NCBI RefSeq assembly: GCF_001194135.2 | Contig: NC_068994.1 | Span: 35,130,811 to 35,194,810 of the forward strand | Reading direction: 5' to 3' | Source: Octopus bimaculoides | Lineage: Eukaryota | Length of the DNA stretch: 64,000 nucleotides | Position numbers and translations under genes: made by a program | Part shown: positions 519-25,139 of the stretch, piece by piece | Layout: the number at the start of each line of letters is the position of its first letter | Position numbering within the stretch: the stretch's first letter is position 1 | The notes under the pieces: model-generated | The model's input: only the letters and a program-made list of their open reading frames with translations | Told to the model about the DNA's origin: nothing | Databases searched by the model: none

Positions 519-573
<55 letters not shown>

Positions 574-2380: not shown

Positions 2381-2477
2381 AGGCACAGGCATGGTTGAGT
2401 AGTAAGAAGCTTGCTTCCTAACCACATGGTTTTAGATTCAGTCCCATTGCATGGCACCCGTTGTGTATATATGTGCA

Positions 2478-2530
<53 letters not shown>

Positions 2531-2885: not shown

Positions 2886-4780
2886 ATGTAGTATTTTCGT
2901 TTATATAAGGAGTCTAGGACATTTACTCCCCATGGACAATAACCACACCCAAGACGATGATTTAAAAACTTCTTAATATATTGGAGAGGAGGTAATTAAC
3001 CAAAGGGGGTAATTTTCCTTGGGGGTAGCTGCCGTCGGGGGAATTGTTCTCACAGGAGTAATAGCCCTGATACATATGTAAGTATCTTCTACTATAGTCC
3101 TGAGCCATGTGCAAGTGTTTTCTACTATATCCCTGCCTTGTAAGTGAATTTGTTAGACTGAAACCGCATGTGAGTGCGTGCGTGTGTCTGTTTTTTATGT
3201 GTGCATGCATGTGCATCTTTGCGTATGTATTTCTCCCTGCCACTGCTTAACAACTGATATGGGTTCATTTACATGTCTGTGAACAAACTTAGCGTCTCAG
3301 CAAATGAGACCAACAGAATAAGTACCAGATTTTAAAAAGATGAAAAATTACTGAGGTTAGTTTGTTTGACGGAGCACTTCAAAACAATGCCCCTGCATGG
3401 CCACAGTCCAACGACAAACAAGTAAGAGGCAAAAAATAAACTAAAAACATATTTCCAAATGCAAAGGCACAAATACATGCCTAAAACAGTGGCAACATCA
3501 ACCACTTGCTTCTTTAAAGACGAAACACTGCATTAGGTCTTCAAACTTCTTTGAATAAATTCTCAGCCATTGCAACTGTCATCATCATCATCATCATCTA
3601 ATGTCCGTTTTCCATGCTGGCATGGGTTGGATAGTTTGACAGAAGCTGATCAGCTGAAGAGCTGCCCAGGCTCTGTGTCTCTTTTGGCATGGTTTCTATG
3701 AATGGATGCCCTTCCTAACAACAACCACTTTACAAAGTGTAATGGGTGCATTTACACAACACCAGCACAGGTGCTTTTTACATGGCACCAGCACCCATGC
3801 AAGGTAAGGAATGCTCAATCAAACAATTAGTTATACATCAGCCTTGGGTAGTAAGGTTTAATATGCTGCCCAATTTAACACCACTACATTGCACCTTACA
3901 CTCCTTTACTGGAGTTCACTATTTCAATCTTTTGGGCTAGTCTCCTGATTGATGATACTTTCCTTTCCCTATACCTGTCTCTGAAGCCCTTCACCTCCTG
4001 ACTAATGTTGAAAAAAAAAAAAAGCATCTATCCCAGTCATATGATGAAAGTGATAGTTTGACCTTTTGTGATCAGAAGAAAAAGTGAACAATTTTACAGA
4101 GCTTCTCCTAGTATCTATTACCATCAGCTAGCTGATACGGTACAATGAAGATGAAAGTTTTAACTGCAGCATATTTGAACAGGCTGTCTTTGATCAGATA
4201 GTCTAATACTCATCGGTTTTACTACAATATGTCTGTGTGTATGTGTTATTAATGTTATTGTTGTTTATGTTTGGGTTAACCTCCTTTGAGGAGATAAACG
4301 AACAAAGGTGTTTGAGTCATAATAATAGCTTATTTTTAGCCATTGTTTGGCCATCAGAAATATTCTCTAACTTAGAAAATAGGTGAGGATTAGCAACAGG
4401 AAGAGCATCTGATCATAGAAAAAGCTGCCTCAACAAATTCTGTCTGACCCATGCAAGCAGGGAAGGTGAATATATGATGATGATGCAGTATCTCATCTAA
4501 CAGCTTTCTTTTTAATATGGTAGAGTGATTCAAGGTAGATTTGGTTACTACTTTTATTTCAACAAAATAAGAGACTTTGTAAGGCTCTCTCAATGCGTCA
4601 CGTGTATATGTATGTGTACATATGTCCTTGATAGATCCAGTCCAGTAACCCTTTGGAGATGAAGCATGCTGCTGCTTCTACAACAGAAGTAGCACTATTT
4701 TCATTATGTATATACCAATAGAATAACAGTATTGAAACTCAGAATTCTTTGTAAAAAGTAAAAAATTATCCAAATCTCAA

Positions 4781-4992
4781 TCATCATCATCATCATCATC
4801 ATCGTTTAACGTCCGCTTTCCATGCTAGCATGGGTTGGACGATTTGACTGAGGACTGGTGAAACCGGATGGCAACACCAGGCTCCAGTCTGATTTGGCAG
4901 AGTTTCTACAGCTGGATGCCCTTCCTAACGCCAACCACTCAGAGAGTGTAGTGGGTGCTTTTACGTGTCACCCGCACGAAAACGGCCACGCT
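4781..4992 (-). mobile_element. Young 3' fragment of an RTE-type LINE/SINE tail ending in (GAT)n
   Basis: Reverse complement of ...AACCCATGCTAGCATGGAAAGCGGACGTTAAACGATGATGAT. CpGs intact. Same tail type as the LINE end at ~58600-58760. Confidence 0.8.
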
Positions 4993-6150
4993 AAAGAATA
5001 ACACATAGAGATAAATTCTTTCTCTTTACTAGCACAAGGATAGTTGTTCAATAAACCAGCCTGATCATCTTATAAAAAGTTAGATAAATTATACAGTAAG
5101 ATGCAAGTATATATCCATTTGAGAAATATAGTGGGGGTGGTTTACTACACTTTGAAACATAATCTTCAGAAAATAATAACTCAATATTCTGTTTTACACC
5201 TTGAAGACTAGCTATTTTTAAAATTGAGTTTAGGCAAATCTTAGTAATGGGAATTGACTAAACTTTTGCTGTCGGTGACAGGCTCAGCTTAATTTCGGCA
5301 GTAGAGATTGTGCTAAATTTTCTAGAACAGCCAATTTCAAAACTATTTAAAAAAATTTTCTTTGTTATTTATAAGACACAAAGTATTGTTTTACAGAACA
5401 ATTGTATTGGGAGCCTTCTGAGAGTTATGTTCTATAAGAAATGTGAAATGCAATCTGTTGAGAGAATATGGGATTACATAAAAAGGGTACATGAAATTAG
5501 ATATTAATGAACAATAGAAATATGTATTCTACCTCTCTCACACACATACAACATACATAAATATATACATGTGCACACACATTCATACACACAGAGGGAG
5601 GGAAAGAGGTGCTTGAAGTATAAACAAGAGAAAATATCCTCAATACATATAATGCACTTTATTCATTCACTTAAAGCTGATGATTCTCTCAACCAGCAAT
5701 TTTAAGTTTCTTGCTTTGTGTCATATTTCATGTAACAAGAAAAAGAATCTTTTTGCTGCATGGACTACACACAGAAACCGAGTAGCTGTTCAAGAATCAC
5801 CAGTGACAAATGAATATATAACAATAACAACAATAGTTTCTGATTTAGACACAAGGCCATCAATTTTGAGGAGTGAGGATAAACTGATATCACAGACCCC
5901 TTTATTTAACTAGTCCTTTATTTTATCGACCTCTGGGATTTAAGCTCGAAATGTAGAGGTGAAAAAGCAAATAAATAAATAAGGCATTTTATCTGATGCA
6001 CCAACAACACAACATAATTTGTAAGTTGTTTCATGAACAAAGAAAAACGCGCTAAAGTAGATTTGTTATAACACATAGTTAAAGACAGGTACTGTTTCAT
6101 AACTTTAAAATATTATAATATTGTGTGTGTATGTTTTGGATGGATGGATG

Positions 6151-6213
<63 letters not shown>

Positions 6214-9200
6214 GATATATGTGCATACATTAACCTGTTGTTACCAGATTGTCATATCGACAGAAATGGATTATATTCTCTAAACAAGTAACTGATTGAA
6301 GACCATAACATACTCTACTCCCTGAGGTATTCAGTACCTTTTTTTGTATCTGTAAGTTTTGCTCAAACAAACAAAATACAGGGTCAAAGCAAAGACAAGC
6401 CCACACATGCATAGATACATACACATACATAGACACGTGAAATTTTCATGGTTTAGATTTGACAAACTAGTCTCAATTGTTCTTTTGAACTATTTTACTT
6501 CAAATTTATGCCATTAATATCCTTGGGAAAGGCATAAATACCACAAACTAACATTTTCTTTCCCCCACTTCCTTCCTTAGTCACACAGAAGAATATCTGA
6601 TAATAAAAAAGAAGTCAAACATATAACCATTGTTCATACTTGCATCTGATAAATATTTATTGATTAACAGATGTGAATGTGTGTGTAAGTGTATACGTAT
6701 GTGTGTGTGGTGGGGAGTATGGTTATTGAACATAAACACTCTTTGTTTCTTTCACCAGCGCTCACACATATTTTCCGGTGTTATCTCGTAAAATATATGC
6801 ATATATTCTCTTTCAGTAATGCAACGAAACAAACACGACTGTAGACTTAACATTTTATGTGTGATACAAAGAGAGAGAGACATGAGAAAGATGGGGGAAA
6901 GATGATGTGATGAGGTGATTAGGTGATGAGGATCTATATTTTCCAGTTGACACCAACCTCTGGGACTAGAACACCAGAGAAATATCGCGCTGAACTAAAC
7001 TGCAGTCAAGAGACTCTAATAATGGAAGTAGTCTCACTTGGAGATTAAAACTAATGTTAGATATTATCACTAGTAAACAACTGAGAAAAAATCAGCACCC
7101 AGCCATCGACATTTCCAATTTATGAGTGTCACAGAAACTCGAACACATCAACGAAGATGATTCTTGTTTTTTTTTTTACTTTTCTTTCTTCAATGCTCTT
7201 TATTCAAATACTAATAGTAGAGTTCACTTTAAACTGGGCTTTAAAAACCACTGACATGCAATAGGTTAAGAAATATGAATATTTAAATTTCAAAGATATT
7301 TTACTTTTGAGGATTAGAGGTATGTTCCATGGCAGAGAGTTTTTTTGCAGTTTGCAGAAGTAAATTGGTTATGGAAAAAAACTTGGTGGAATTTTAGATT
7401 GGTGTTTTACAGAGATTCCTTGGAGGGAATTCATCAGACAGGAAGAAAAATATGTGATAGCAAATAAAATTTTGGGAACTAGATTTGTGGCTGTGGTAAG
7501 AAGCTATGTGGAAAAGAAAGATGGTGGCAATGATATGTCAGGGCACACCCACAAGTTACAGGAAGATGAAAAGCAGCATGGGTAGGTAAATAAGTTCATA
7601 AGTGCATGAAGGAAAATAACAAATGGATAGAGATGGAGATAGAAGTTAAATGCAGTGAGTGGTGAACATGGTAGAGGTATAGTCAATAATACATATTAAT
7701 ATGTATTTCAACAGTAAGCTTAAACAAGCCAACAAAGGATTCCCTATGTAATTGCTTGACCTACTAAAAAAAACAGCCAAATTTCCCTCAAATTTCACAC
7801 ATAACTACGTTTGAAAAGAAAGGCAAATTAGATAATGTAATCCTGGATTTGTTATGCATAAGAAAATGATGCTATGGTTACTGCAAAAATACCGTTAGCC
7901 AAAAGTATAATTAACCAGAGGTAAGTTGAAGATAAACAGCAAAAACAATTAATAAGTCTACATATAACCTCTGTTAGAAGGTTGCAATTATTAAAAAGAA
8001 GCTTCTCTCTCTCTCTCTCTCTTTCATACACACATGCACACAATGCACCTAAGTTTGAATTTGTGTGTGCGTGTATGTGTGTCCTCTGCTTCATAGTTGA
8101 GTGAAATGAGCTTGAGAGTTTAGTGACATGAGAAAGAATACTTGATCCCAACATGCAAGCTCCTACATATTAAAAAAAGATATGCATGTATGTCATACAT
8201 ATAATACATTATATATACAAATATATACACACACATTACACACACACATGTAAATGGGTTTGTTAAAGTCTACAAGGTGTCAAAAGAAGGTGAGTATAAA
8301 AAAAAGAAAACACCAGCCATCTCAATATTTTATGTAGTCTATGTCTAAAACAAAACACGAACACAATACTGAAACATGCAAAAATACATAAATTCACAAA
8401 TGTGCACTTGCATGCACACACACACAGTCACGTACAGAAATAGACACTCGTGAATTGAAAATATTCAGAAAATACACAGAAACACAAACATAGACTCATT
8501 AGCATAAAATTATTCATAAATGCAAACATACAACCTCCACTCATTCATATCACCCATAAAAAAAATACACAAAGTTACAAATATGCTTACACACACCACA
8601 AATATACCGACATACACAAAAACAGATGTGACAACATCAACACATATACAGACATACTTTCATACACACATACATGCGTGTGTGTGTTTGTGTGTGTGTG
8701 TATGTCTGTGTGCATATATATATATAAATAAACATACACGCACATAAAACACAAAAATATATTTAAACATACATGCAAGTACAGACAAGTACATACACAG
8801 CCACATTCATAAAGGTAGATACACATAAGAGAAGCAGACACACATTAAAACAAACCCATCCATTCTCCAAGCACTTGCATAAAGAAAATTGAACTTATAT
8901 GGAGAAACATGTTTACATTTACATCTCTATTTACACACACAACTTCCCCGAATTCTGTCCTACTCACATGACTAAGTCAATTACACGATCAAAATAATAT
9001 ATCAATAGGCAAGAATCTTTCGTGAATTTTTATCAGAAAATCTGTTATCTATTCTATGTAGCTAGGTAAAGTAGGATGTACACATATGCTTGATGGATTA
9101 TATCAAGAAATTTGGTACTGCAAAACAATCGAAGATGATTGCACATCTGTAAGCACTTAGGATCTGTGAATAAAGTCCTTAAAGTATCGAGGACAGAACA

Positions 9201-9528
9201 TCTTCTTTTTGCTTGGACAGTGTCCAAGAACAGACAAATGCGATTAAGAGGATACCCGAATTGCCTGTTCATTACCTGATGTCACTTCTTCTCTCACTTC
9301 TGGCACATCATGAACTAACATTCCCTTTCACTCCTTATGCAGCATCCACTCTGCCACAGGGCGCTAAATAGTGATGGTCACTCCCTTCAATATTGACGTA
9401 TGAGTGTTTGAAGGTAAGGATATTTAAAAAAAATAAAGTAACGGATTAAAAATAAAGAAGCTGTATCCATTTGCAATGAATGCATGAATGTAATTTGAGT
9501 CCGAGTAAGGAGGATGATGATGATGATG

Positions 9529-9589
<61 letters not shown>

Positions 9590-9785
9590 TAAACAAAATA
9601 ATAATAATAAACAAAATCAATGGTTAAATGGTTATCAGCAAAAAAAAAAAACATTCATCAAAAATAACTGTAATTGAGGAGGCGAGGAAACAACTGAACT
9701 AATACCAAAGATATATGGAATCAAAAAGTGTAACATGAAGGACTGAGACAGAATGTCATTTGACTAAAATATCAAAGACATACAT

Positions 9786-10158
9786 AGGTGCAGGCATGGC
9801 TGTATAGTTAAGAAGCAGGTTTTGCAACCACATGGTTTTGGATTCAGTTCTACCTTGGGTAAGTGTGTCCTACAATAGCTCTGTGCTAACTAATATCTTG
9901 TGAATGAATTTGGTTGAGAGAAACTGTGCGGAAACCTGTCATGTGTATGTATGTGATCATTGCCTACTGCTTGACAACTACTTGTTGGTCTGTTTATATT
10001 CCCATAACTTAGTGGTTTGACAAAAGAGACCGATAGAATACCAGACTTCAAAAGCACGAGTGCTAGTGTTAATTTATTTGACTAAAACACTTCAAGATGT
10101 TGCCCCAGCATGATTGCAGTCCAATGACTGAAACAAGTAAAAGAAAGGTAAAAGAAAG
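9786..10158 (+). mobile_element. SINE family A, near full length
   Basis: Head GGTGCAGGCATGGCTGTATAGTTAAG...GGATTCAGTTC, CCTTGGGTAAGTG core, family tail. Confidence 0.8.
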
Positions 10159-10410
10159 ATATAGACATCAAGAAATATTAATATCATAACTGGAAAAAGA
10201 TTATCAAAGTTATGTGTGAGTGGTCCACTCTAGTATAAGGTGCTGAAACATGGATATTAAATAAAAGTACTGACAAACAGATTATGTCATTGAGATGTAA
10301 GCATATAGAAGACTTTTGAGAATATATCAGAGGCAGAACACAAAGACCAAAAGCTAAGAACTTTATTAGACATTAACAAAGATAGAAAACAAAATATTTT
10401 GGCCAAAAGT

Positions 10411-10820
10411 AAGGCTGTGTGGTTAAGAAGCTCGCTTTGCAACCATGTGGTTTTGGGTTCAGTCCCACTGTGCAGCACCTTGGGCAAGTGTTTTTTTTAC
10501 TGTGGCCCCAGGCTGACCAATACCTTGTGAGAGAATTTGGTAGGCGGAAACTGTGTATAAGCCCATTGTATAGATATATATATAATTATATATGTATGCA
10601 TGTAACTTTTTGTGTTTATCCCCCATCACCACTTGACAACTGGTGTTGGTTTGTTTAAATCCCTGTATAGTGGTTTGGCAAAAGAGACCAACAGAATAAG
10701 TACCAGACTTATATTTAAGTACTGTGGGTGATCTGTCCGACTAAACCCTTCAAGGTGGTGCCCCAGCATGGCTGTAGTCCAATGACTGAAACAAGTAAAA
10801 AAATAAATAAATAAAAGATA
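10411..10820 (+). mobile_element. SINE family A, near full length
   Basis: GGCTGTGTGGTTAAG (A box), GGTTCAGTCCC (B box), CCTTGGGCAAGTG (CORE-like), family tail. Confidence 0.85.
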
Positions 10821-11599
10821 AACGATGTAATTAGTAAAAATGGATTATAGATAGTGTTAATAGAAGGTAAATAAATGAGAGAAGTGAAAGCAGAAAATGA
10901 AGAATTATGTGGATGGAATATATCAAGAATTGAACATATTTAAACTATAGTGAATGTATAAGAGCAGCAGAAGAAAGATGAACATGGTGATCCATGGTAT
11001 TCAACCTCTGAGATGAAACATTTGATGATGATGATGATAATGGTGTGAAGTGTTTCTAGCCAAAAGCAAAACATAGGCTTGATACTCATGGCACAGTAAT
11101 CCCATAATGTATTCACTCACCAATTATCTCTCTCTCATTCTCTCTCCTCTTTCTTTCCTTCCCCCCCCCTCCCCACAAACATATTTAAGGCATATATAAC
11201 ACAGTACGCCTGATCAATAAATGTTATTACTCCAACTTTCCAATTAAGTCATTAGTCATTATTTAGCATTAGTAAAGAAGAAGTTTCCAGCTAGTGATTC
11301 AAAAAATGGCCCAAATAGATATTCAGTTTCTCAAAACTCATTCTACTTATGTGTACATGTAAAAACTGGATGCAGATTAATTTCAAAAACTGAAAGGGGT
11401 TAAAAAGAAAACTTGTGTGAACACCATAGGATCGGGTAGTGATTTTTAGATGACCTATACTGCCTAGAACAGCTTCATCATTATTTCATATCTAAAAATC
11501 AATCAGACATTTTAAATTATATCTAAAAAAAATTCACTTGATTGATTAACATGAAGTTCTTCAACAACCCACAGATTTTTAAAATTTTTATATGATTAA

Positions 11600-11960
11600 G
11601 TCTCAGAAAGCTTAAATGACTGAATTTCATAGACACAAGGAAAACAAGATGATGGGAGTGAGTTTCAAGAGTTTGAGGAAAGAAAATGTTAGAATAAAAG
11701 AACTTATGATGAACAAGAAGCTCAACAGAGAAACAATGCACCTGGGAAGAAAGATGTTATAATAGAGGATACTAGACCAGAAAGCTCATCAGAGCAATGA
11801 TCATGGAAATACTTATAAAAAGACATAATAAAGATCACTTTTGATGATGTGCCAAAGACTCCAACCTAGCAGAAAGATGGCCCACCATAAACCTCTGGCT
11901 TACCAGTTCCAGTCAAACCATCTAATCTATGCCAACATGGAAAACAGCCATTAAATATTG
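11600..11960 (+). mobile_element. Degenerate RTE-type LINE 3' end
   Basis: ENKMMGVSFKSLRKENVRIK resembles the RTE ORF C-terminus and is followed by the family tail CCAGTCAAACCATCTAATCTATGCCAACATGGAAAAC. Confidence 0.55.
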
Positions 11961-12270
11961 ATGATCTTGGATTTGATGAATCATGTTAAGACAATCAAAG
12001 GCAGCACCAATGCAAAGTTGAATGGTGGCCTTACAGAGACGCAAGATGTGCTGCCTCCACCCTTTGCTCTTTCTGCTGACTTTTCCATGTTTGCATCTGG
12101 ATGCTCTTCCTGTCACCAACCATTTCCAAGCATGGTAATATTTTCCTATAGCCAAATATATTTTTCATAGAAGACTGGAAATGAACAACCTCGCTACTAT
12201 GATGATGATGATGATGATGATGAGATGATGATGATGCTCATTTACAATCATCATGTGATGTCTCGGCAAG

Positions 12271-12331
<61 letters not shown>

Positions 12332-12505
12332 ATACATGTATATAATGATGACAACTGTATAGTAATGTAAGACAATAAAAGACAGGTTATAGATCTCATA
12401 ATATAGATGTCTGCTTAGAATTAACATAAGTGGCTAGCTCACTGGTAAAGTGCCTGATGAGAACTCTTTAGGCTGCCATTCCTTCAGACTATGAACAATC
12501 TCCTT

Positions 12506-12583
12506 CTATACATATAAAGAAACAGGCTTTGTTTCTACACTGTTGGAGTTATGAAATTCTTTTGATGAACAGAATGGAAGGTT
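12506..12583 (-). CDS. Pcdh: Protocadherin predicted terminal coding exon (NLPFCSSKEFHNSNSVETKPVSLYV*)
   Basis: Acceptor CATTTTCCTTTTATTGTAG| ending at 12584. Phase 0 matches the donor at 12991. 25 open codons, then TAG at 12508-12506. Confidence 0.65.
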   Translation of the reverse strand, partial: NLPFCSSKEFHNSNSVETKPVSLYV

Positions 12584-12990
12584 CTACAATAAAAGGAAAA
12601 TGTATAAGTGAAAAATAAGCCTCAAAAATAAAAACTGTGTGTGCGTGTTATACATACATACATACACACACACACATACTTTTATATACAGCTTACACTC
12701 CAGGGCACTCCATGTGTGTGTGTGTGTGTGTGTGTGTGCATGTGTGAATTGTGATTCTCAGCTTAAATTAAAAACTTAGTACCCAGTTGATGCAAGAATG
12801 TTTTCTCCTTTCTCTCTCTATATATAAACCTATCAATCTATCTATTTATCTTCGACACAATCCATTCTATAATGAATTGTGTCAAAGAGAGAGAGAGAGA
12901 GTATAGATGGATAAGCCAATAGATATGCATGCTAAATTCTACCAACTTCAGAAATTCATTTTTCTCTATCCTTCTCTCCTTGCTACTTAC

Positions 12991-13124
12991 TGCTCTTTGA
13001 TAACATCTCATCATCCCATTGAAAGAACTATCTGGTAGCAAATCCTTGCCAAGTTCTGTACAGTTTAAATCTTCATTGTCACTAAGAGGACAGGGGTCAA
13101 TTTTATTATTTAACCTCCACTGTT
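12991..13124 (-). CDS. Pcdh: Protocadherin cytoplasmic exon, 134 nt ((E)QWRLNNKIDPCPLSDNED...MMRCYQRA)
   Basis: Acceptor GTTATTTTAG| (phase 1), donor GCA|GTAAGT (phase 0), open frame throughout. Phase matches the upstream 154-nt exon. Confidence 0.72.
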
Positions 13125-13226
13125 CTAAAATAACATCAACCATATTCACCTTACTATACTCCTGAACCTTATAAATTACAATTCCAGGAGAGATCTACCA
13201 GGCTGTGTGCTATGCCTTTGCCTTAC

Positions 13227-13238
13227 TGCCCCAGGAAA
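13227..13238 (-). CDS. Pcdh: Candidate 12-nt frame-preserving microexon (TTTCCTGGGGCA)
   Basis: Flanked by TTTATTTCTGTGTAG| and |GTAAGG. Lies between two phase-1 junctions. Confidence 0.4.
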
Positions 13239-13391
13239 CTACACAGAAATAAATATATATAGACGAATAAATAGATAGATAGATAAATAAGGTGATGCCA
13301 TCTCTTAAATGAAAATATCCTTGATATTTTGTTAAGAGCTGACTGTAAGGTGTAAGGCAGTGCTATTAGAGGTTATTGGCAAAATGTTTAC

Positions 13392-13545
13392 CTGGTAATA
13401 TCTCATAGTGAGTGGTGCTGGCTTCACTCCAGCCTTGTCCACTGTCACTAAGAGAAGACATGGTTGACATCTCATTGAAGTGATCCACTGGTCTAAGCAT
13501 GTGTTGCTCTTCTTTACTGATCTCAATAACACCTTGGAGACTTCC
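13392..13545 (-). CDS. Pcdh: Protocadherin cytoplasmic exon, 154 nt (GSLQGVIEISKEEQHMLRPVDHFNEMSTMSSLSDSGQGWSEASTTHYEILP)
   Basis: Acceptor TCTGTCTTTCACCATTGACAG| (phase 0, matching the donor at 43198), donor CAG|GTAAAC (phase 1). Encodes S-x-x-D-S-G-x-G-x-S, resembling the DSG-x-G-x-S core of protocadherin cytoplasmic tails. Confidence 0.88.
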
Positions 13546-13874
13546 CTGTCAATGGTGAAAGACAGAATGAGTTCAAGTTGTAGTACATTTCGAAATTTAC
13601 ATGTACACTTTAGTAGTACATATATAAATACACACACACACACATACACACATGCGCACACATCTATATATGATGCCCTAGCGTGGCCACAGCCTTTAGG
13701 CTGAAATGCATAAAAAGAATAAAAAACATAGATAAATATGTGTGTGTATGTATTTATGTACACATATAGTTACACACATATATACATATCTAAATTTACA
13801 TATGTGCATACACACACACACATACGCACACACACATATACATATATGTGTATACATCTTTATCTTTAGAAGGC

Positions 13875-14290
13875 ATAATACACTTGATATAAGCAGTTTA
13901 TTTAGTAGGGATTATAATTCACCTTAGGCATTATATTAAGTAAGGATAGAAAATAAACATAACAGGAGCAGTTTATTAAGTAGGAATAATAAAATACTTA
14001 ATATGAGCATTTTATTACGTAGTAATATTGATACACATAACATGCATAACCTGAGTAGTTTATTAAGTAGGGCGTATAATAATACATATAATATGAGTAG
14101 CTATTGAGAAGAAATGATAACACACTTAATACAGAACATCAGTTTATTAATTAGGGATAATAATAATAATAATAATAATAATAGACATAATATAAGCAGT
14201 TTATTAACTGGGCAAAGTAATACATTTAACGTGAGGAGATTATTAAGCAGGAACAATACTATAATTTTTATGAGCAGTTTGTTATAATTG
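13875..14290. repeat. Degenerate ~40-bp minisatellite, about 10 units (ATAATACACTTAATATGAGCAGTTTATTAAGTAGGG-like)
   Basis: Core GCAGTTTATTAAGTAGG recurs at ~13893, 13928, 13968, 14007, 14055, 14097, 14139, 14196, 14235 and 14274. Confidence 0.8.
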
Positions 14291-14483
14291 TGTATTAAAT
14301 GAAAAATGATTCTGAAAAATATTATAAAACACTTTATGAGTTTTAGGGTCCCTAGAGAATGTTACATCAACATGTAGAGTGTTATGGAGCAAAAGTCTAC
14401 CCCTTTTTAACCTACTGAGTAAGGTCCAACAATTACAGATACAATCATCATCATCATCATCATCACCACCAGTAGCAACAATA

Positions 14484-14704
14484 ACAATATTCTTTTCTAC
14501 TCTAGGTACAAGGCCCGAAATTTTGGGGGAGGGGGCCAGCCAATTAGATCGACTTCAGTATGCAACTGGTACTTAATTTATCAACCCCGAAAGGATGAAA
14601 GGTAAAGTTGACCTCAGCGGAATTTGAACTCAGAATGTAAAGACAGATGAAATACTCCTAAGCATTTCGCCCAGCGTACTAACATTTCTGCCAGCTCGCT
14701 GCCT
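14484..14704 (-). mobile_element. tRNA-derived SINE, family B, near full length
   Basis: Minus strand reads GGCAGCGAGCTGGCAGAAATGTTAG...TGAGTTCAAATTCCGCTGAGGTCAACTTTACCTTTCATCCTTTCGGGGTTGATAAATTAAGTACC. Similar copies lie near 5900, 25420, 26303, 27850, 29270, 29501, 32455, 35400, 36340, 36600, 51305 (all minus) and 61310 (plus). Confidence 0.85.
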
Positions 14705-15362
14705 TCACGGCCTCAATAATATTGCTGTTAGTACTATTATTGTTATTGTATTTTTGGTATGTCTTAGGATCATCCCAAGAAAACTGATTTACTACAAAGT
14801 TTGACAAGATGGGAATTTTTCTTTTTTGAATATTTCATGAATAAGGAACCTTTGAATGTGAGTCTGCTCAACTAGTGCTAACCTTTGGCTAAGAAACAAC
14901 AACTAATAGACAAATTTTAATAATAGAAATGAAAACAAGCACAGAAGACTAAACTAAAACATAATGAATAAAAGGCAAGGTCCAAAGAAATTAATGATGA
15001 TTTATGTCAAAAGTTATTTTGACAATTTTAGTTGAAAAATCAAATTTATAAAGTTGGAAAGCTTAATGTAAAATTTAAAAAAACAAGTCAAACATTTTTA
15101 ATATATAAAGGTGGTGCCCCAGCACAGTCATAGCTTCTGGCTAAAATCCATCATAGGATATCAAATCCATGCAAGCATGGAAAAGCAGCAGTACAATGAT
15201 GATGGTGATAATGATTCACATCACTGCTTCTCAGAATTTCTTACCAAGTGCAATTCATTCAGAGTGGTTTAAAAGTTTTAAGTGAATAAATAAATTCTAC
15301 ATGTATTGAGCACTCTGTCTCCCATGTGTGACTATGTATATGTGTTTGTTCATATATACACT

Positions 15363-15427
<65 letters not shown>

Positions 15428-15792
15428 CATTACTGATATGTTTGCTTAGACACACACTCTAGATTTCTGCATCTATATTTAAGATAAAAGAATTTGTTGA
15501 CCTTGTACTCTGCCATCAGAACCAAAATGTTAGAGGCCAATAAATATATTCTTTGAATTTGTAACAAACTATATTATTGTAGATTTTTGTCTTACAATTG
15601 ACAATAAAAATCTAATTACATGCATACCCTGCAGTAAGGGGGAGAGAGAGAGAGAGAGAGAAGAGGTGATTGAGCAATATACAGCAATCTATTGATTTGG
15701 TTGGTTATATATAACAATCAACTTTATTGGAGATTTTTGTCTTGCAGCCTTAGAGCTTAAAATACAAACTGGTTATCTATACATGCATATAT

Positions 15793-15825
<33 letters not shown>

Positions 15826-15931
15826 CATACACACACACACACACATTTGTAAACACATGCACATTCATATATGCATACATATACATATATATTCATATAA
15901 ATACATATATTCATGGATATATATATACATT

Positions 15932-16032
15932 TGGAGCCTGGTGTTGCCATCCGGTTTCACCAGTCCTCAGTCAAATCGTCCAACCCATGCTAGCATGGAA
16001 GGCGGACGTTAAACGATGATGATGATGATGAT
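15932..16032 (+). mobile_element. Young 5'-truncated retroposon tail with (GAT)n
   Basis: Differs at about one base from the reverse complement of 4781-4885. Confidence 0.8.
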
Positions 16033-16108
16033 ATAGTTAAATATATCAATGAAAATCTATATGCATAAATATCTATATTCATTTTATATGTATATATAAA
16101 TAGATGCA

Positions 16109-16155
<47 letters not shown>

Positions 16156-16218
16156 GCACAAATATATATACATAGCTATACATATCAATGGAAATTTATA
16201 TACATAAATATTTATATG

Positions 16219-16344
<126 letters not shown>

Positions 16345-16864
16345 AATACATGTATACATATAGTTACAGATACTAATGAAAATTGGTATAGAGAGAGGGG
16401 GATAGAGTGAGAGAGTGGGTGATTTGAATGTATACATGTATATGTGTGGTTGATTAATAACAATAAACACAATAAATATATTTTTTTTTTTACAAAATCT
16501 GAAATATGCTCGTTCAAAGAAAAGATGTAGTAATTCTCAATAAATCTTGCAATCTAACAGTATTCTATTATATTTTAGCTAGATACGTATGATTTAACAT
16601 CTTTAAACAAATGTTTATAAACTTTGTGTGTGGTAAGTAAAATAAATATTCTCTGTTTGGTTTCTACATTGATAATAGGTCCTGAGCTCTCAAACATCAG
16701 TGAGTGGGGTGTTACCAATATTTAGGAAAACAAGCTAACAATATTTCTACCAATATACATATCTTCAATTGATTATATTCAATTGAAATATTGATTTCAA
16801 CTACATTAGGAAGGTTAAATGGATCTAAAGCAATAATGCATAGTGCATGTGTGTACATATGTGT

Positions 16865-16926
<62 letters not shown>

Positions 16927-17829
16927 CAAGGTGGTATCAAAAATTCTCAGATTAGTTCTGTATCACAGCAACAGATGGCAGCACACAGTTTGCACAGTTA
17001 GAGCTAGCAGTGACTTTCATGAGGTAGTGTGCCGACTGACATCGCTGTGTCTACTTTGCAAGTTATGTGGTTTGTGTTTTTGTGATTGTGTGTATGCTGC
17101 AGTCTGCGATCTTGTCATGGGCTGGAAGCTGGAACAAAGAGCCAACATAAAATTTTGCATTAAACTTGGGAAGTTTGCTACAGAAACATCGCACAAGCTT
17201 TGGCAAGCTTATGACAATGAGGCAATGGGTCATTGCAATGTTTCAAGTGGCACAGGCACTTCAAACATAGAAGAATGTCCTGAGAAGACAATGAGCAATC
17301 TGGAAGACCTGCCACAAGCATCACCCCTGGAAACGTGGAAAAATTTCATTGGTTTGTGCATGAGGATTGTTGGAGGACAATCAATGATGTTTTGAAGTGT
17401 TTGAGGGAGAATGTTTGGTGAAAGTGACTGGATCTATGAAGCACAAAGAATTGGACTCTTCACATCAACTGCACCCTGTCACTGGGCTCTTCTCACTTGG
17501 GATTTCTTGTCAAAAGCAACATGGTATCGCTTCTGCACCCAGTGCCTTTCTCAGATTTTGCACTTGCAGACTTCTATCTCTTCCCTAAGATGAAAATGCA
17601 GCTCAAAGGTTGCTGTTTTAACACCATTGTCAAGATCAAGAGCAAATCGCAGGCCCTCAACTTGCTTACGGAAAACAACTTCCTGAACGGATTCCAGAAG
17701 TGGCAGGAATACTGGGATCGGTGTATTGCTGTGCAAGGTGGCTATTTCAAAGGAGAATGTTAAAACTTAAGTAAATAAATAATCTTTTATTAAACATAAC
17801 TAGCGTGGGAACTTTTTGATACCATCATC
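16927..17829 (+). mobile_element. Internally deleted mariner (DD34D-type) transposon
   Basis: TIR TA-CAAGGTGGTATCAAAAATTCTCAGATTAGTT, with inverted copy AACTAGCGTGGGAACTTTTTGATACCA at ~17798-17824. N-terminus EQRANIKFCIKLGKFATET from ATG 17117. C-terminus HPVPFSDFALADFYLFPKMK...WDRCIAVQGGYF (degenerate YSPDLAPxD). Frameshifted, with the central catalytic part missing. Confidence 0.92.
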
Positions 17830-18891
17830 ATCATTGTGTGTGGATACACATATAATCAACACCATTGAAACATCTATTTCCATGCTGGATTAGGTTGAAA
17901 GGTTCAACAGGTTCCAATGGGACTGAGGGCTACATCCAGTGCTCCAGTGTCTGCTTTGACATGGTTTCTATGGCTGCTTTTATCACATCACCAGCACTAG
18001 TGAAATCACCATGCACAACAAGAAACCCTGAGAGGGAAACTTAATGCTTGAAAATGAGGAGAACAGAGGTGTAAAATACAAGAGAAAAGGGCTGGAGCAG
18101 AACAGGTTTCTTGCTGTAGAGGAGCTACATGACTACTCACTTTTTAGAAGAGGAGTTGGGAGTGATTTGGTTGAGATGGGAAGTGATGACACTTGCCTAA
18201 GGTATCTTGCCGAAGGTATCATGGAACCAGTTTAGCTCACATCCACATGGTTCCAGGTTATGTCCTATTGTCATCCCACTGTAAGGCACATTGGTGTCTT
18301 ATATTTTAGCCCTGGGCCAAGTAAAGTTTTATGAGTGGATATGGTAGACAGAAACTGAAAGAAGCCTGATATATATGTGTATATATATATATAAATATAC
18401 ATGCATAAGTGTGTCTTTGTGTTTGCTCCACATCACTCGTTGGCAGCAGGTTTTGATTTGTTTACATTCCGGTAACATAGCAGTTCAGCAAAAAGACCAA
18501 ACAGAATATCAGGTCTAAAATAATAAGTACCGGAGTTGACTAAAACCCCAGCATGTCCACAGTCTCCTGAATAAAACAAGTAAAAGCTAAAAGATATATA
18601 TATCTTCCATGCCAGTATCTGTCACATCATCATTTTCCATAGGTTTAATGGAACTGTTTCTGAATAGAGTTTCACAAGCTTGTTGTTATTCTCCATCTGT
18701 TTTGTGAGGACTAGTATTGTGAAGTCAGCCTTCAGCACTTTTACAGCTTAATGACCGAAAGTCTACTGACCACAAAACAAAATTTATTTCAAAACAGTTC
18801 ACCTTGTTTATATATAAGAAAGGATCATCTGGTTACTTCTCATTAAGGAAATTAACATCTATGAATTTGTTTGTGTGTATGTGGAGGAAAT

Positions 18892-18994
<103 letters not shown>

Positions 18995-19356
18995 TGTAGT
19001 CATTAAAATGAAACTCTACTCTCCTACATAATTACAGGCTCCAAAATGACCTGTGTAATCAGTACTTCATTAATATTGTAGGATACTATCAGTCTAATAT
19101 GTAAAAGATATGTTTTTTAATACACATACAGGCATACATATATAAGTGTATATGTGAAGTTGTATCAATGTGTATGCATATATGTAATTGTGTGGGTGGA
19201 ATGTTTCTCTTTACTTTATGAATTATAAATGTTCTCGCTTGATGATTGCACTAGACCTTGTTAGAGAATAAGAAATTAGACATATAGATATTTTGTTTGT
19301 GGGTGTGTGTATTTGTGTAGCTATGTAAGTATTTAAGTATATGTATGCCTATGCAT

Positions 19357-19422
<66 letters not shown>

Positions 19423-20529
19423 CATTCCATTATATTGTATGTCTACAGAACCATATTCAGTCCACATCCCATCAATTCTAAGCTTGATTATGTCTCCAAT
19501 GTTTCTATTTCTGTACATTTTAAAACTCCTTACTGTTTACCTATTATCTCTAATCCATACACCCAGACAGATGACACCATCCTTCCTTTCTCATCATCCT
19601 TCCACATGGAATAATTCACATCAAATGAACCAATGAGAGTGGGTGAGTGAGAGAGAGAGAGCATTAAATGGTCAAAAGACCTGTTAGTAATACTAGCCAA
19701 ATTTTTCGCAAATCATGCCCTACCAAAATAAATGGAATAGTCATAGTTGGAAAGCTTCATCAAAAATCAGCTTGATCAGAAGAGACCCGGAGTAAAAGAA
19801 ACTGCACATTAGATTTGATGTATTTGCATAAACAGAGGTACTGAAAATGTCTGCAATGAAGGCATGAAAAACTAGTCTCTTGCAACAGCACCAATGTGTA
19901 GTCCCTATAGCAAAACTATTCCAACACAGGTAAAACTATTCTATAAGTTACAATTTACCTCAATGATCTGAAATAAAAAATATTCAACACTGAACAGTTA
20001 CTCATCTTTATAAAGTATAAACATAACTCAAATACTAGGGAGTATGCAGCTGTTACTCATACAGATCTCTTAGACAATATTTAAAAATCCGAAAACTAAA
20101 AACATTCTCTCAGGCTGATTAGAGAAGATTAACAAAAGTTCATTCACAGAATCACTACAACCACTACCCTATATCTATACCAAATTCTCCCATAATCTGC
20201 TATTTCTTTTGTAACAGCTTTAGGAATTTTGTATGAAATTAAAGAACCCACCCACCCTTTTTGATTCTCTAACTTTATTTTCTATCTTTTAATCACTTTG
20301 TTCCCTCACATCTCTTCCTCTCTTTCCATCTGAGGAAGCAACCCACCTCCTCTTCAGTAAGACACATTTAATCTCTCAACACCTGGCATAAATCCATCTC
20401 CCTCAAAAGTATATCTAAACTCAATTGAAGGCCTCTTGTCTTGCAAGTTACTTGGTGACTTCACTAGTGCCAGTGCCACAAAGGCACCCTCTGCCAAAAA
20501 CACTCTGGAAAGTGGATGGCATTAGGAAA

Positions 20530-21030
20530 AATATGACTGGGTTCTCCTGCTTGTATGGCATGGTGCAGAGTCCTGTTACTAGACGTAGGGTCTTCTAGCA
20601 GCCACCCTCTTGACCCAGGGCAGCACTACCTCTTCCAGGCACTTGATGTAGGCCTCTGTGTTGAGTCTGAGGCTGTGTGGGAAGATAAATAGAGGCATAA
20701 CATTGCCATCACTAGTGATCATTCCAAACACCATGATGTTGACTGGATGTTTGATTTTTATCACTCTCGTCATTTGTCCTCAGATTGACACCCTAAACAC
20801 TCGGAAATCTTTGTACTGGAGCTTCCGGCATGAATGCTAAGCAGCACAGTATGTTGTTTCAAAATTTCTGGCAGAGTGAATGCGTCATGGTGCTGTTTTT
20901 TTCACAGGTGCCCAACTGACCCTACCATATTGTGTAGTCAACAAAATCAAAAACAAACAATGCACATGCACGAAATCAAAAATATAAAATGGCAACAATT
21001 TACCAATCACACACTTTTACATATATATAT
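20530..21030 (-). mobile_element. Tc1/mariner-superfamily transposase fragment with one end
   Basis: KHPVNIMVFGMITSDGNVMPLFIFP...LPWVKRVAARRPYV**QDSAPCHTSRRTQ contains the QDxAPxH second-Asp motif. In-frame stops present. Confidence 0.8.
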
Positions 21031-22323
21031 ATTGTGATATCATGGTTTCTGTAACACACACATGTATAAAACGTGCATGAAATGACTTTGTGGCCAAACA
21101 AATGGTAATATAAAGGAATAAACTTTGTATGTGGCCCCTGTAAGTTGAACCTTGTATGCTTTGGTTAATGCTCAAATCCATCAGAAATATCCAACTAGCT
21201 AGTCATTGTTTCTTTGTCTTATTAAATATAATGATTACGATAAATTTGATTTAATCTCCACTGGTCGTTTTTTTTTTTCCCACCCTTTTTTCTTTTCTTG
21301 TGCTGCGATTCAGTATACAAGAGGCACTCATTCTAACTACATTATTTCAAACCCTTTTTTCATTTCCCCTTTGGATAACAAAATAAGTAAATTGCAGCAG
21401 GAGACAGAGAGGAGATAAATGGTGGTGGGGGGTAGAGGAAAAAAGATGGTGGGGTGTTGGGGGGTAATATTTCATGTCCATGCAACAAGATTAGAATGAG
21501 GAAGGCAGTAAATCTGAATGATGATAATGATAGAAAGGAAGAAAGCGATGATGATTATGATGATGCAATGCTGCTACTGTCAATGATGACGACTATGACA
21601 ACAATAATGGCAACAGTAAAGCATAATGGTGGTATTGATAATAATGAGGCATATTTCTAACAATGATGATGATGATGATGATGATGGATCTAGCAAGAAT
21701 AATGAAAAGATGGGGTAAAACACAAGTGGTAACTTTCAACTGTCATGTTCTGTTTGTCTATCCATCTGCATTAATGTTCGTTTTTATGTTCAGTTATAAT
21801 AAAAACAATTTTACATTAATCTAATGGGTTGCTCTATGCTGTTATAGTCCAACAGTGGCTTAGCTGGTCAAAACTTTGTAGTCACTGTCAACAACATTCT
21901 TCTCTAAGAATAATTTCACTCTCTCTCTCTTCCTCCCTCCCTCTCGTGTGTGTGTGTGTGTGTGTGTATGAGTATTTGGAGTGGCAGTAAAAATATCAAC
22001 ACTCCAGCTAGAAAGCTAGTCATTGCAAGGAGGGAAAGAAAAGGCCCAAGTACAGCTGCAATGGTTTACTTTCAGCAGCACATAAATGAAGTTGGAAGCT
22101 TGTCGAAACCAGACACTGGTTCCTTAGACAAAGTAGCTAATCGTATTCAATTTAACTCAGCCCTGTTTGGAGAGGACTGCCACAAGAATGAATGGAGAAA
22201 CAGGTGTTTCCCACTGGAGGTTTACAGTTGAGGATTCTCAGGTCATTCTCTAAGTAAGGCATATGGAGAAAAAGGAGACCCATCAATGTCAATATAGGGG
22301 CTGGACTGCTGAGAATGCATCTA

Positions 22324-22544
22324 CGAAGGGATGCTGAAAAGTTCCTGGCTTTTAGAGTATCAGAAAATGCCTAGTTGGAGGCCCAACTTTCCAAGATTTT
22401 TTACAGGGCTTAGAAAAACTGAAAGACCACTGCAATAAGAATGTGAATATGAGCGGGAAATATGTTGGATAAAATCTTAATAAACTGATCCACTTGTATT
22501 TTTTTTTTTTAATCCAGAGCCAGAAACTTTTCAGAACCCCCTTG
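22324..22544 (+). mobile_element. Mariner-derived MITE (~220 bp)
   Basis: TA|CGAAGGGATGCTGAAAAGTTCCTGGCT...AGCCAGAAACTTTTCAGAACCCCCTTG|TA gives inverted ends flanked by TA. Internal KLKDHCNKNVNMSGKYVG* resembles a transposase C-terminus. Confidence 0.85.
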
Positions 22545-22929
22545 TAGAATGCATTGGCTGAAAGGAGGTGATCAGTGGAGTTAAGAGAATGCTGCTAGTA
22601 CACAGGCCTAGATTTAATTGACTAATGACAGGTCACCTAGATGAGGCTGTATTTCTCAAGATCTGAAACACTGTGAGTCCAGCATACACTACTGACATAT
22701 CAAATCAATTCATTTATAGATGTATGTAGAACTATATGTGTGTGTATGTGTACATATGCATGTTTGAATGTGAAATGTATATATTATAGGCAAGGCATGG
22801 TTGTCTGGTTAAAGTGTTTGCCACCTATCCACATGGTTTCAGATTCAGTGTAGCACCTTGGGCAAGTGTCTTCTGATTGACCTAAGCCTTGTAAGTGAAT
22901 CTGATAGGCAGAAACTGAAAGAGGCTCAT

Positions 22930-22969
<40 letters not shown>

Positions 22970-23029
22970 CACGCGTGCATGCGCATGTGTGTATTTGTGT
23001 CCCCATGTCTATTATTATTATTATTACTA

Positions 23030-23510
23030 TTATGGCTGGGTTCCAACCTGATCCACAACAACAAAGTCCACCTGCCACGCCTCTTGGTCCATTGTCACTG
23101 CCTCGAGGTCCTAGATACATTCCAGACCAGTGTCTGTAATCAAGTTGTTGATGTAAGTGTAATGACATTTTCCTCTTCCTACATCACCATGAAATGGGTT
23201 CCACAAGGTTAATTTGGATGCTTCCATCTCGGTGACACACACAGTGGCCAGATAGTCGCAGCCATCTTTGCCTGATCTCCTCAGTAACTTTTGTCAGGCA
23301 TTATTGCATGATTGCTGTAAACAAATGTCACTGCGGGTGCTATTTACACTCAGGTACTACTGACTCACACTTCCCAACTTCTTTTGCTATCCATAGTATG
23401 ACTGTAGCTTCAGAAGTTGCGCAAAGCCTTACACACAATCCTTCCTTCCCTTACCATGTCTTTCCCACAGCCATCAAATCACAACTGTTAAATAGGTATC
23501 ATATTTGATT
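23030..23510 (-). mobile_element. RTE-type LINE C-terminal fragment
   Basis: RQRWLRLSGHCVCH and LWNPFHGDVGRGK...YINNLITDTGLE match RTE C-terminal motifs. Confidence 0.75.

Positions 23511-25075: not shown

Positions 25076-25139
<64 letters not shown>

What the first reader, a model, noticed from the sequence alone, without database searches (positions are those of the whole stretch)
12506..13545. Hidden three-exon cytoplasmic cassette, 30 kb from the ectodomain exon, completes a 920-aa protocadherin
Seen: exons of 154, 134 and 78 nt packed in 1.04 kb, each with GT-AG sites and a phase chain 0-1-0 that starts from the phase-0 donor at 43198. The ORF track shows the first in the wrong frame and misses the last. 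The first encodes STMSSLSDSGQGWSE. Known: a DSG-x-G-x-S core occurs in delta-protocadherin cytoplasmic tails (CM1 region). The length sums to 2397+154+134+78 = 2763 nt, or 920 aa plus stop.
Basis: partly seen in the sequence, partly recalled or inferred. Interest (0 to 1): 0.75.

Follow-up and report, generated by a model that had tools for sequence, protein, structure and literature searches.

The report
Octopus protocadherin tail exons, already annotated
The region holds the genuine second exon of an already-annotated Octopus bimaculoides protocadherin gene and one of its short alternative last exons. The proposed middle exon and the 920-aa protein have no support, because the gene's main product (945 aa) ends in a conserved last exon about 10 kb outside the window.

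Summary
The window is a 100% match to Octopus bimaculoides chromosome CM046614.1. The gene on the minus strand is RefSeq "protocadherin beta-15" (XP_014776954.1), which has four predicted isoforms.

- **Exon 13545..13392 (154 nt):** real. It is identical to residues 800-850 of the annotated protein, and 20 other octopod protocadherins (24 proteins including this gene's own isoforms and orthologues) match it up to that donor.
- **Acceptor at 12583:** also real.
- **Exon 13124..12991 (134 nt):** unsupported.
  - It is absent from every isoform in three octopus species and has no similarity to 130 cephalopod protocadherins.
  - All five substitutions against O. sinensis and O. vulgaris fall in four nonsynonymous codons.
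  - Its GTAAGT donor reads GTAGCA in both other species.
  - It is no better conserved than 13% of intronic windows.
  - 81 open AG..GT segments exist in the same 808 nt.
- **Main product:** 945 aa (X1). It ends in one 287-nt exon 10.5 kb beyond window position 1, which carries the octopod motif WNLPxRNSFTSYxKPLPAVPK.
- **CM1 link:** no support from Pfam, a 1.84-billion-protein profile search, or the literature.

The finding is ordinary and already known.

The parts
43198..45594 (-). Exon 1 (2397 nt, 799 codons). It encodes the signal peptide, six cadherin repeats, the transmembrane helix and the membrane-proximal cytoplasmic segment. The donor is CAG|GTGAGT, phase 0.
   Evidence: The ORF and donor were read directly. 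Pfam Cadherin matches in 6 stretches at E 2.7e-72. It is identical to XP_014776954.1 (P0125) and 100% identical to GCA_001194135.2.
13546..43197 (-). Intron 1 (29,652 nt).
   Evidence: It is bounded by the exon-1 donor and the exon-2 acceptor ...cattgacag|GG. No other protocadherin-like coding piece lies inside it. Identity to O. sinensis is 93.5%, counting substitutions only.
13392..13545 (-). Exon 2 (154 nt, phase 0 in, phase 1 out). It encodes GSLQGVIEISKEEQHMLRPVDHFNEMSTMSSLSDSGQGWSEASTTHYEILP, a conserved cytoplasmic segment present in isoforms X1, X2 and X3.
   Evidence: It is identical to residues 800-850 of P0125. 24 of 130 cephalopod protocadherin proteins (20 other genes plus this gene's own isoforms and orthologues) match it, and the similarity stops at the donor. 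Identity to O. sinensis is 98.7%, with 1 synonymous and 1 nonsynonymous change, which places it in the top 2% of intronic windows.
12991..13124 (-). It is most likely intronic sequence and not part of the gene's annotated products.
   Evidence: It is in none of the four isoforms in O. bimaculoides or O. sinensis, nor in the three O. vulgaris models. blastp against 130 cephalopod protocadherins gives no hit at E<=10. The 5 nt differences from O. sinensis and O. vulgaris hit 4 codons, all nonsynonymous, with none synonymous. The donor is GTAAGT here but GTAGCA in both other species. Identity is 96.3%, which 13% of intronic 134-nt windows equal or exceed. It lies within a 103-aa ORF that overruns both proposed sites. 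In its favour, its codon-composition score is as high as that of exon 2.
12549..12583 (-). Coding part of the alternative last exon of isoform X3 (861 aa). It is spliced directly from exon 2 and read G|AA CCT TCC ... TCA TAA, giving EPSILFIKRIS-stop (stop at 12551..12549).
   Evidence: The X3 tails of P0123 and P0129 map here at 100%. The frame was checked by hand against (frame 2 gives PSILFIKRIS*). The acceptor is ttttccttttattgtag|AA. Identity to O. sinensis across 12583..12506 is 77/78.
10715..10785 (-). Coding part of the alternative last exon of isoform X2 (873 aa). It reads G|TC ATT GGA ..., giving VIGLQPCWGTTLKGLVGQITHST-stop, and lies inside a dispersed repeat.
   Evidence: The X2 tail of P0124 maps here at 100%. 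The sequence and acceptor tttcag|TC were read. A repeat copy at 10085-10145 is 89% identical, and there are at least 10 peptide-level copies in the locus. The coding part is 100% identical in O. sinensis.
1..13391 (-). The part of intron 2 (isoform X1) that lies inside the window. The true last exon of the 945-aa product is outside the window, 10,474 nt beyond position 1 (L002 66068..66354, where L002 coordinate = 55595 minus window coordinate). The full intron 2 is 23,864 nt.
   Evidence: tblastn of the X1 tail finds nothing in the window. It finds a 100% match at L002 66067..66351. The acceptor is cttctccag|GTACGAAA and the stop follows ...CCTTATCAG TAA.

Best explanation
**What it is**
The window contains most of one Octopus bimaculoides protocadherin gene on the minus strand. 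RefSeq calls it "protocadherin beta-15" (XP_014776954.1 and isoforms).

**Structure**
- A 2397-nt first exon encodes the whole ectodomain, the membrane helix and the start of the cytoplasmic tail.
- It is spliced across a 29.65-kb intron to a 154-nt second exon (13545..13392), which encodes a conserved cytoplasmic segment.
- From the donor of that exon (phase 1) the annotated transcripts choose between three last exons:
  1. A distal 287-nt exon, 23.9 kb downstream and 10.5 kb outside the window. It gives the 945-aa full-length protein with the octopod-conserved end NDVIDLKS...WNLPxRNSFTSYxKPLPAVPK.
  2. A proximal exon starting at 12583. It adds 11 residues and a stop (861 aa).
  3. A repeat-derived exon starting at 10785. 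It adds 23 residues and a stop (873 aa).
- A fourth isoform skips exon 2 and reads the distal exon out of frame (826 aa).

It is therefore exon 2 plus the proximal alternative last exon, joined through a 134-nt stretch of intron that merely looks like an exon.

**Shown and inferred**
- Shown here: the exon positions, frames, homology and between-species conservation.
- Inferred: the usage and function of the isoforms. Choosing a proximal last exon would yield receptors with the same adhesive ectodomain but without the conserved C-terminal motifs. These would be tail-less or signalling-deficient variants, as described for vertebrate delta-protocadherin isoforms.
For: - The window is 100% identical to GCA_001194135.2 CM046614.1.
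- Exon 1 plus exon 2 equal residues 1-850 of P0125.
- Isoform lengths fit the mapped exons exactly: 799+51+95 = 945, 799+51+23 = 873, 799+51+11 = 861, 799+27 = 826.
- The same four isoforms are annotated in O. sinensis, and matching models exist in O. vulgaris.
- The X1, X2 and X3 tails map at 100% in O. bimaculoides and at 100% amino-acid identity in O. sinensis.
- The distal exon has a strong acceptor.
- The tail architecture, an exon-2 type segment ending Y-E-x-L-P-G followed by a last exon with W-N-L-P and K-P-L-P invariant, holds in 17 aligned paralogues from Octopus and Argonauta.
- Locus-wide tblastn finds 21 hits for exon 2 and 38 for the last exon.
- Annotated exons are much better conserved than intron. 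They are 98.7-100% identical, against an intronic mean of 90.9% over 134-nt windows that count gap columns, and 93.5% for intron 1 counting substitutions only.
- Literature: octopus protocadherins are multi-exonic, with one large exon for the ectodomain and transmembrane helix. Each gene has its own final exons, not shared ones (PMC6339937, PMC10084454, PMC9068888).
Against: - The isoform models are computational predictions from RefSeq and from the O. vulgaris genome project. I could not inspect any RNA-seq or long-read junctions.
- The short isoforms X2, X3 and X4 could be splicing noise rather than regulated products.
- The 134-nt segment has a consensus GTAAGT donor in O. bimaculoides. Its codon-composition score (0.089 per codon) is as high as that of exon 2 (0.102), in the top 6% of open intronic segments. 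Low-level inclusion cannot be excluded.
Confidence: 0.9

Rival explanations
1. The three exons of 154, 134 and 78 nt form the gene's cytoplasmic cassette, and the complete protein is 920 aa.
For: The coordinates, GT-AG sites and phase chain are correct. The acceptor of the 134-nt segment is conserved in three species. Its reading frame stays open in O. sinensis and O. vulgaris. Its codon composition is coding-like.
Against: - The 920-aa sequence is not in the 15-billion-protein collection.
- No annotated isoform in three species contains the 134-nt exon.
- In contrast, 38 paralogues match the distal last exon that this model omits.
- All 4 changed codons are nonsynonymous, against 16 nonsynonymous and 30 synonymous in exon 1.
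- The donor is degraded to GTAGCA in O. sinensis and O. vulgaris.
Confidence: 0.02
2. The 134-nt segment is a young cassette exon specific to O. bimaculoides and used at a low level. A 4-nt difference gives it a consensus GTAAGT donor. Its inclusion shifts the frame of the 12583 exon, so a minor 920-aa isoform exists beside X3.
For: O. bimaculoides has GCA|GTAAGT where O. sinensis and O. vulgaris have GCA|GTAGCA. The acceptor has a T-rich tract. The frame is open and the composition coding-like. The downstream acceptor at 12583 is real.
Against: RefSeq models four isoforms of this gene and none includes it. There is no outgroup to say which donor state is ancestral. 81 comparable open AG..GT segments exist in the same 808 nt. 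Even if it were spliced in, the product would lack the conserved C-terminal motifs and the segment evolves like neutral sequence.
Confidence: 0.08
3. Only the 945-aa isoform is functional. The proximal last exons at 12583 and 10785, and the exon-2-skipping isoform, are splicing or polyadenylation noise that the annotation pipeline captured.
For: The X2 exon lies in a dispersed repeat. X4 reads the last exon out of frame. The X2, X3 and X4 tails have no homologues among paralogues other than repeat copies.
Against: The same three short isoforms are annotated independently in O. sinensis. The X3 and X2 coding parts are 98.7% and 100% identical between species, in the top 2% and top 0.3% of intronic windows. 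Other paralogues also have short-tail isoforms, for example P0002.
Confidence: 0.3

Closest known systems
Octopus bimaculoides RefSeq gene "protocadherin beta-15" (XP_014776954.1 / XP_014776955.1 X1 945 aa; XP_014776956.1 / XP_052829034.1 X2 873 aa; XP_052829035.1 X3 861 aa; XP_014776957.1 X4 826 aa). Orthologues: O. sinensis XP_029645579.1 and O. vulgaris CAI9732389-91.
   Same: It is the same locus. The window is 100% identical to the assembly. Exon 1, exon 2 and the X2 and X3 last exons map exactly in the window.
The octopod expanded protocadherin family (168 genes in O. bimaculoides; Albertin 2015 as cited in PMC6339937 and PMC9068888).
   Same: There is one large exon for the ectodomain, the transmembrane helix and the proximal tail, followed by a few small private cytoplasmic exons. 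The paralogue tails align with an exon-2 type segment and a last exon carrying WNLP...KPLP.
   Different: This gene is an ordinary member. The DSGxGxS core of its exon 2 is found in only 12-13 of 41 paralogues with a recognisable exon 2.
Vertebrate delta-protocadherins (PCDH1/7/9/11 and PCDH8/10/17/18/19).
   Same: Both have isoforms with an identical ectodomain and different cytoplasmic tails (PMC7339444). Both are multi-exon genes with a large first exon.
   Different: The defining cytoplasmic motifs CM1, CM2 and CM3 were not detected. Pfam finds no cytoplasmic family. A tail profile searched against 1.84 billion proteins hits only octopod sequences. Styfhals et al. report no CM1-3 in octopus (PMC6339937).
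Vertebrate clustered protocadherins (alpha, beta, gamma).
   Same: Both have a single large variable-type exon encoding six cadherin repeats and the membrane helix, and both show tandem genomic clustering (PMC10084454).
   Different: There are no shared constant exons. The last exon belongs to this gene alone, no other protocadherin first exon lies between exon 1 and the last exon, and paralogues have their own diverged tails. This agrees with PMC9068888.

Membership tests
Protocadherin (cadherin superfamily), octopod expansion | Six tandem extracellular cadherin repeats. | tested here: met
   Pfam PF00028 Cadherin matches in 6 stretches at E 2.7e-72, and PF08266 Cadherin_2 matches at the N-terminus.
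Protocadherin (cadherin superfamily), octopod expansion | The ectodomain and transmembrane helix are encoded by one large exon. | tested here: met
   There is an uninterrupted 2397-nt ORF at 45594..43198. It includes the hydrophobic stretch INLMIVIIVAAIILSVAIVISLAICII, seen by eye, and ends at a GTGAGT donor. No transmembrane predictor was run.
Protocadherin (cadherin superfamily), octopod expansion | A private downstream cytoplasmic exon 2 ending Y-E-x-L-P-G, and a last exon with the octopod motifs NDVIDLKS and WNLPxRNSFTSYxKPLPAVPK. | tested here: met
   Exon 2 is at 13545..13392. The last exon is at L002 66068..66354, outside the window. The alignment of 17 paralogue tails has W, N, L, P, F, K, P, L, P invariant. 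The tail profile hits only octopod proteins.
Vertebrate delta-protocadherins | Conserved cytoplasmic motifs CM1 and CM2 (plus CM3 RRVTF in delta-1). | tested here: not met
   Pfam finds no family on the 234-aa cytoplasmic region at E<=10. A profile of the tail finds 28 representatives among 1.84 billion, and every one of the 9 named among the 10 representatives looked up is from Octopus or Argonauta. No RRVTF is present in P0125. The literature reports no CM1-3 in octopus (PMC6339937). Caveat: a 7-residue motif is below what these searches can detect, and no vertebrate sequence was aligned directly.
Vertebrate clustered protocadherins | Many variable first exons spliced to shared constant exons. 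| tested here: not met
   Only one protocadherin first exon lies in the 56-kb gene span, and its last exon is private. Paralogue tails are diverged copies rather than one shared sequence. PMC9068888 states that cephalopods do not use shared final exons.
   It is absent from all isoforms. It has no homologue in 130 proteins. It shows 0 synonymous and 4 nonsynonymous changed codons. The donor consensus is lost in two sister species. Its conservation sits at the 87th percentile of intronic windows. RNA evidence is not testable with these tools.

The most novel reading that the evidence does not exclude
The DSGxGxS core in exon 2 (SDSGQGWSE) is shared by about a third of octopod paralogues that have a recognisable exon 2. 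It could be a functional short linear motif, for example a phosphorylation-dependent degron or kinase site matching D-S-G-x(2,3)-[ST]. That would be a first cytoplasmic link between the independently expanded cephalopod and vertebrate protocadherins. My searches cannot detect or exclude a 7-residue motif. The pattern assignment rests on memory, not on a test run here.
Probability: 0.08. Interest if true: 0.4.

Novelty: already known. Interest (0 to 1): 0.08.

Why it matters
As found, it matters little. The locus is one ordinary member of the well-described octopus protocadherin expansion, and its exon structure and isoforms are already in RefSeq. The check is still useful in two ways.

1. A plausible GT-AG and phase chain built from sequence alone got two of three elements right, yet produced a wrong protein. 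The true conserved last exon lies outside the window, and an intronic ORF with good-looking splice sites was taken for an exon.
2. This gene, like vertebrate delta-protocadherins, is annotated with tail-truncating alternative last exons that are well conserved between octopus species. This could be followed up with existing RNA-seq to ask whether tail-less receptors are regulated products.

Tried and rejected
1. **Word-index search with the 121-aa reader tail.** It returned nothing, but this is a false negative. P0001 and P0125 contain exon 2 verbatim and were not retrieved, so I gave this null no weight.
2. **Looking up isoform X3 of O. sinensis by exact sequence.** Only the longest product of a gene is indexed, so I used X1 instead.
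4. **Short hits from the profile search, as possible transcript evidence for junctions.** They are ORFs that read through the exon-2 donor or the last-exon acceptor, so they come from genomic contigs and not from spliced RNA.
5. **Literature search for the string SGKGDS, to verify the recalled delta-protocadherin motif.** It gave only irrelevant hits. Albertin 2015 is not held.
6. **A tblastn alignment of P0002 that extends past the exon-2 donor to 13282.** It contains stop codons and is spurious.
7. **Pfam on four long intronic ORFs.** It found nothing.
8. **Third homologue search with the 103-aa intronic ORF.** I did not run it. It is expensive, and it was unlikely to help given the false negative.

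Full report
**1. What is at the coordinates**

On the minus strand, the ORF 45594..43198 is 2397 nt and ends CAG|GTGAGT in phase 0.
- 13545..13392 (154 nt) has acceptor ...cattgacag| and donor |gtaaac.
- 13124..12991 (134 nt) has acceptor ...gttattttag| and donor |gtaagt.
- 12583..12506 (78 nt) has acceptor ...ttattgtag| and ends in TAG.

The concatenate is 2763 nt and translates without an internal stop to 920 aa. The first small exon encodes ...STMSSLSDSGQGWSE.... The observation as arithmetic is therefore confirmed.

**2. Identity of the locus**

- The big exon has about 1200 protocadherin homologues. The closest are from Octopus and Argonauta.
- The best cluster holds "protocadherin beta-15" isoforms X1-X4 of O. 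bimaculoides and O. sinensis, plus three O. vulgaris models.
- P0125 (XP_014776954.1, 945 aa) is identical to the window's exon 1 plus the 154-nt exon.
- The window matches O. bimaculoides GCA_001194135.2 chromosome CM046614.1 at 100% over all non-gap sequence. The mapping is L002 coordinate = 55595 minus window coordinate.
- The gene is already annotated.

**3. The annotated exon structure, mapped back**

Isoform tails were mapped by tblastn:

| Isoform | Length | Composition | Position of last exon |
|---|---|---|---|
| X1 | 945 aa | exon 1 + exon 2 + 95 aa (GTKSCQTELVPK...WNLPMRNSFTSYAKPLPAVPKVPYQ) | L002 66068..66354, 10,474 nt beyond window position 1 |
| X2 | 873 aa | exon 1 + exon 2 + VIGLQPCWGTTLKGLVGQITHST | window 10785..10715 |
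| X3 | 861 aa | exon 1 + exon 2 + EPSILFIKRIS | window 12583..12549 |
| X4 | 826 aa | exon 1 + distal exon read one base out of frame (VRNLAKQNW...) | same distal exon as X1 |

- The X1 last exon has acceptor cttctccag|GTACGAAA. Its tail has no match in the window.
- The X2 exon has acceptor tttcag|TC and lies inside a dispersed repeat.
TCA TAA. This is frame 2.
- The lengths add up exactly: 799+51+95, 799+51+23, 799+51+11 and 799+27.
- Across the whole 56-kb gene span, the only protocadherin-like pieces are exon 1, exon 2, the X2 exon and the distal exon.

**4. The first small exon is real beyond doubt**

- 24 of 130 cephalopod protocadherin proteins (20 other genes plus this gene's own isoforms and orthologues) match it. 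Paralogues are 36-71% identical, and every meaningful alignment stops at ...YE(T/I)LP(G), which is at the donor 13392.
- It differs from O. sinensis at 2 of 154 nt, one synonymous and one nonsynonymous. That makes it better conserved than 98% of intronic windows.

**5. The middle 134-nt exon is not supported**

Evidence against:
- It is absent from all isoforms in three species.
In the 17 full-length paralogue tails aligned here, exon 2 joins directly to the conserved last exon.
- Against O. sinensis and O. vulgaris it has 5 nt differences in 4 codons: K>T, D>A, P>Q and M>I. All are nonsynonymous and none synonymous.
- Exon 1 shows 30 synonymous and 16 nonsynonymous changed codons over 506 synonymous and 1891 nonsynonymous sites.
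- At the exon-1 nonsynonymous rate, about one change would be expected in the 111 nonsynonymous sites of this segment. This estimate is my own arithmetic.
- The true last exon has no amino-acid change between the two species.
- The donor reads GCA|GTAAGT in O. bimaculoides but GCA|GTAGCA in both O. sinensis and O. vulgaris.
- Its identity of 96.3% equals that of the flanking intron (95.5%) and is reached by 13% of intronic 134-nt windows.
- GT-AG plus an open frame is cheap here. There are 81 candidates in the 808 nt between 13391 and 12584, and at least 8 in each of 36 equal-sized pieces of intron 1.
- The segment sits in a 103-aa ORF that overruns both proposed sites.

Evidence in its favour:
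- The acceptor is conserved and the frame stays open in the sister species.
- A codon-composition score is as high as for exon 2, in the top 6% of open intronic segments.

I therefore cannot exclude low-level inclusion specific to O. bimaculoides.

**6. The CM1 claim**

- The STMSS..DSGxGWSE stretch is the conserved core of exon 2 in part of the family. D-S-G-x(2,3)-[ST] occurs in 12 of 41 paralogues with a recognisable exon 2.
- Pfam finds no cytoplasmic family on the 234-aa tail, even at E<=10.
- A profile of 17 paralogue tails was searched exhaustively against 1.84 billion representative proteins. It finds 28 hits, and every one of the 9 named among the 10 representatives I looked up is from Octopus or Argonauta. 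No vertebrate delta-protocadherin and no squid protein appears among them.
- Styfhals et al. report no CM1, CM2 or CM3 in octopus protocadherins. They also cite Wang and Ragsdale as finding no analogy with vertebrate intracellular motifs (PMC6339937).
- The CM1 link is thus unsupported. A 7-residue resemblance is beyond what these tests can settle, and I could not verify the vertebrate motif itself.

**7. How it most likely works**

Shown:
- There is one large ectodomain and transmembrane exon, a 29.65-kb intron and a constitutive 154-nt cytoplasmic exon.
- The annotated transcripts then choose among a distal conserved last exon and two proximal last exons.

Inferred:
- The distal choice gives the full receptor, with the octopod-specific C-terminal motifs (NDVIDLKS, WNLPxRNSFTSYxKPLPAVPK) that presumably dock cytoplasmic partners.
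- The proximal choices give receptors with the same adhesive ectodomain but a truncated tail.
- This is comparable to the tail-variant isoforms of vertebrate delta-protocadherins (PMC7339444).
- The proximal exons are unusually well conserved between species, which argues mildly for function. They might still be noise (rival 3).

**8. Comparison with what is known, and novelty**

The gene fits published descriptions of octopus protocadherins. They are multi-exonic, with a large first exon and private final exons rather than shared constant exons (PMC6339937, PMC10084454, PMC9068888). Everything in the finding that is real is already in public annotation, and the part that would be new is not supported.

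Verdict: already known, low interest.

Noticed in passing
window 10715-10803 (-), copy at 10085-10145; further copies in L002 and L001: The alternative last exon of isoform X2 is an exonised piece of a dispersed repeat. A second copy 658 nt away is 89% identical, and at least 10 peptide-level copies (VIGLQPCWGTTLK-like) lie in the locus on both strands. The exon's 23-aa coding part is nevertheless 100% identical in O. sinensis.
   Followed up: partly
window 54543-54758 and 54769-54984, with a 10-N gap at 54759-54768: Two 216-nt stretches flanking a 10-N gap are identical to each other. This is most likely a duplicated-flank assembly artefact at a gap.
   Followed up: no
window 47465-48655 (+): Three overlapping ORFs of 352-396 aa, in all three frames, run through the 968-N assembly gap 47601-48568. 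They are artefacts of the gap and not genes.
   Followed up: yes
L002 66068-66148 (outside the window) and isoform X4: Annotated isoform X4 skips the 154-nt exon, so the conserved last exon is read one base out of frame (VRNLAKQNWSRKQLKSPHHLPLTDLRT-stop). The same model exists in O. sinensis and O. vulgaris. It may be a non-productive or tail-less product.
   Followed up: partly
window 16847-17395 (+), 1030-1578 (+), 24492-25208 (+), 29409-29891 (-): These are long ORFs in the introns and the flank. Two look transposon-like by eye, but Pfam finds no family at E<=0.01 for any of them.
   Followed up: partly
tool behaviour: The word-indexed homologue search with the 121-aa tail returned nothing, although P0001 and P0125 contain its first 51 residues nearly verbatim. 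Short queries can give false negatives in that tool.
   Followed up: yes
window 12263-12343, 12640-12750, 13613-13870, 9496-9618: (CA)n, (GT)n and (ATA)n microsatellites flank the small exons. Several differ in length between O. bimaculoides and O. sinensis, which accounts for most alignment gaps in the intron.
   Followed up: no
tail profile A1: The octopod protocadherin tail (exon-2 type segment plus last exon) has only 28 representatives among 1.84 billion proteins. Every named one among the 10 looked up is from Octopus or Argonauta, and no squid or other mollusc is among them. The cytoplasmic tail therefore seems to be an octopod-specific invention at the level HMMER can detect.
   Followed up: partly
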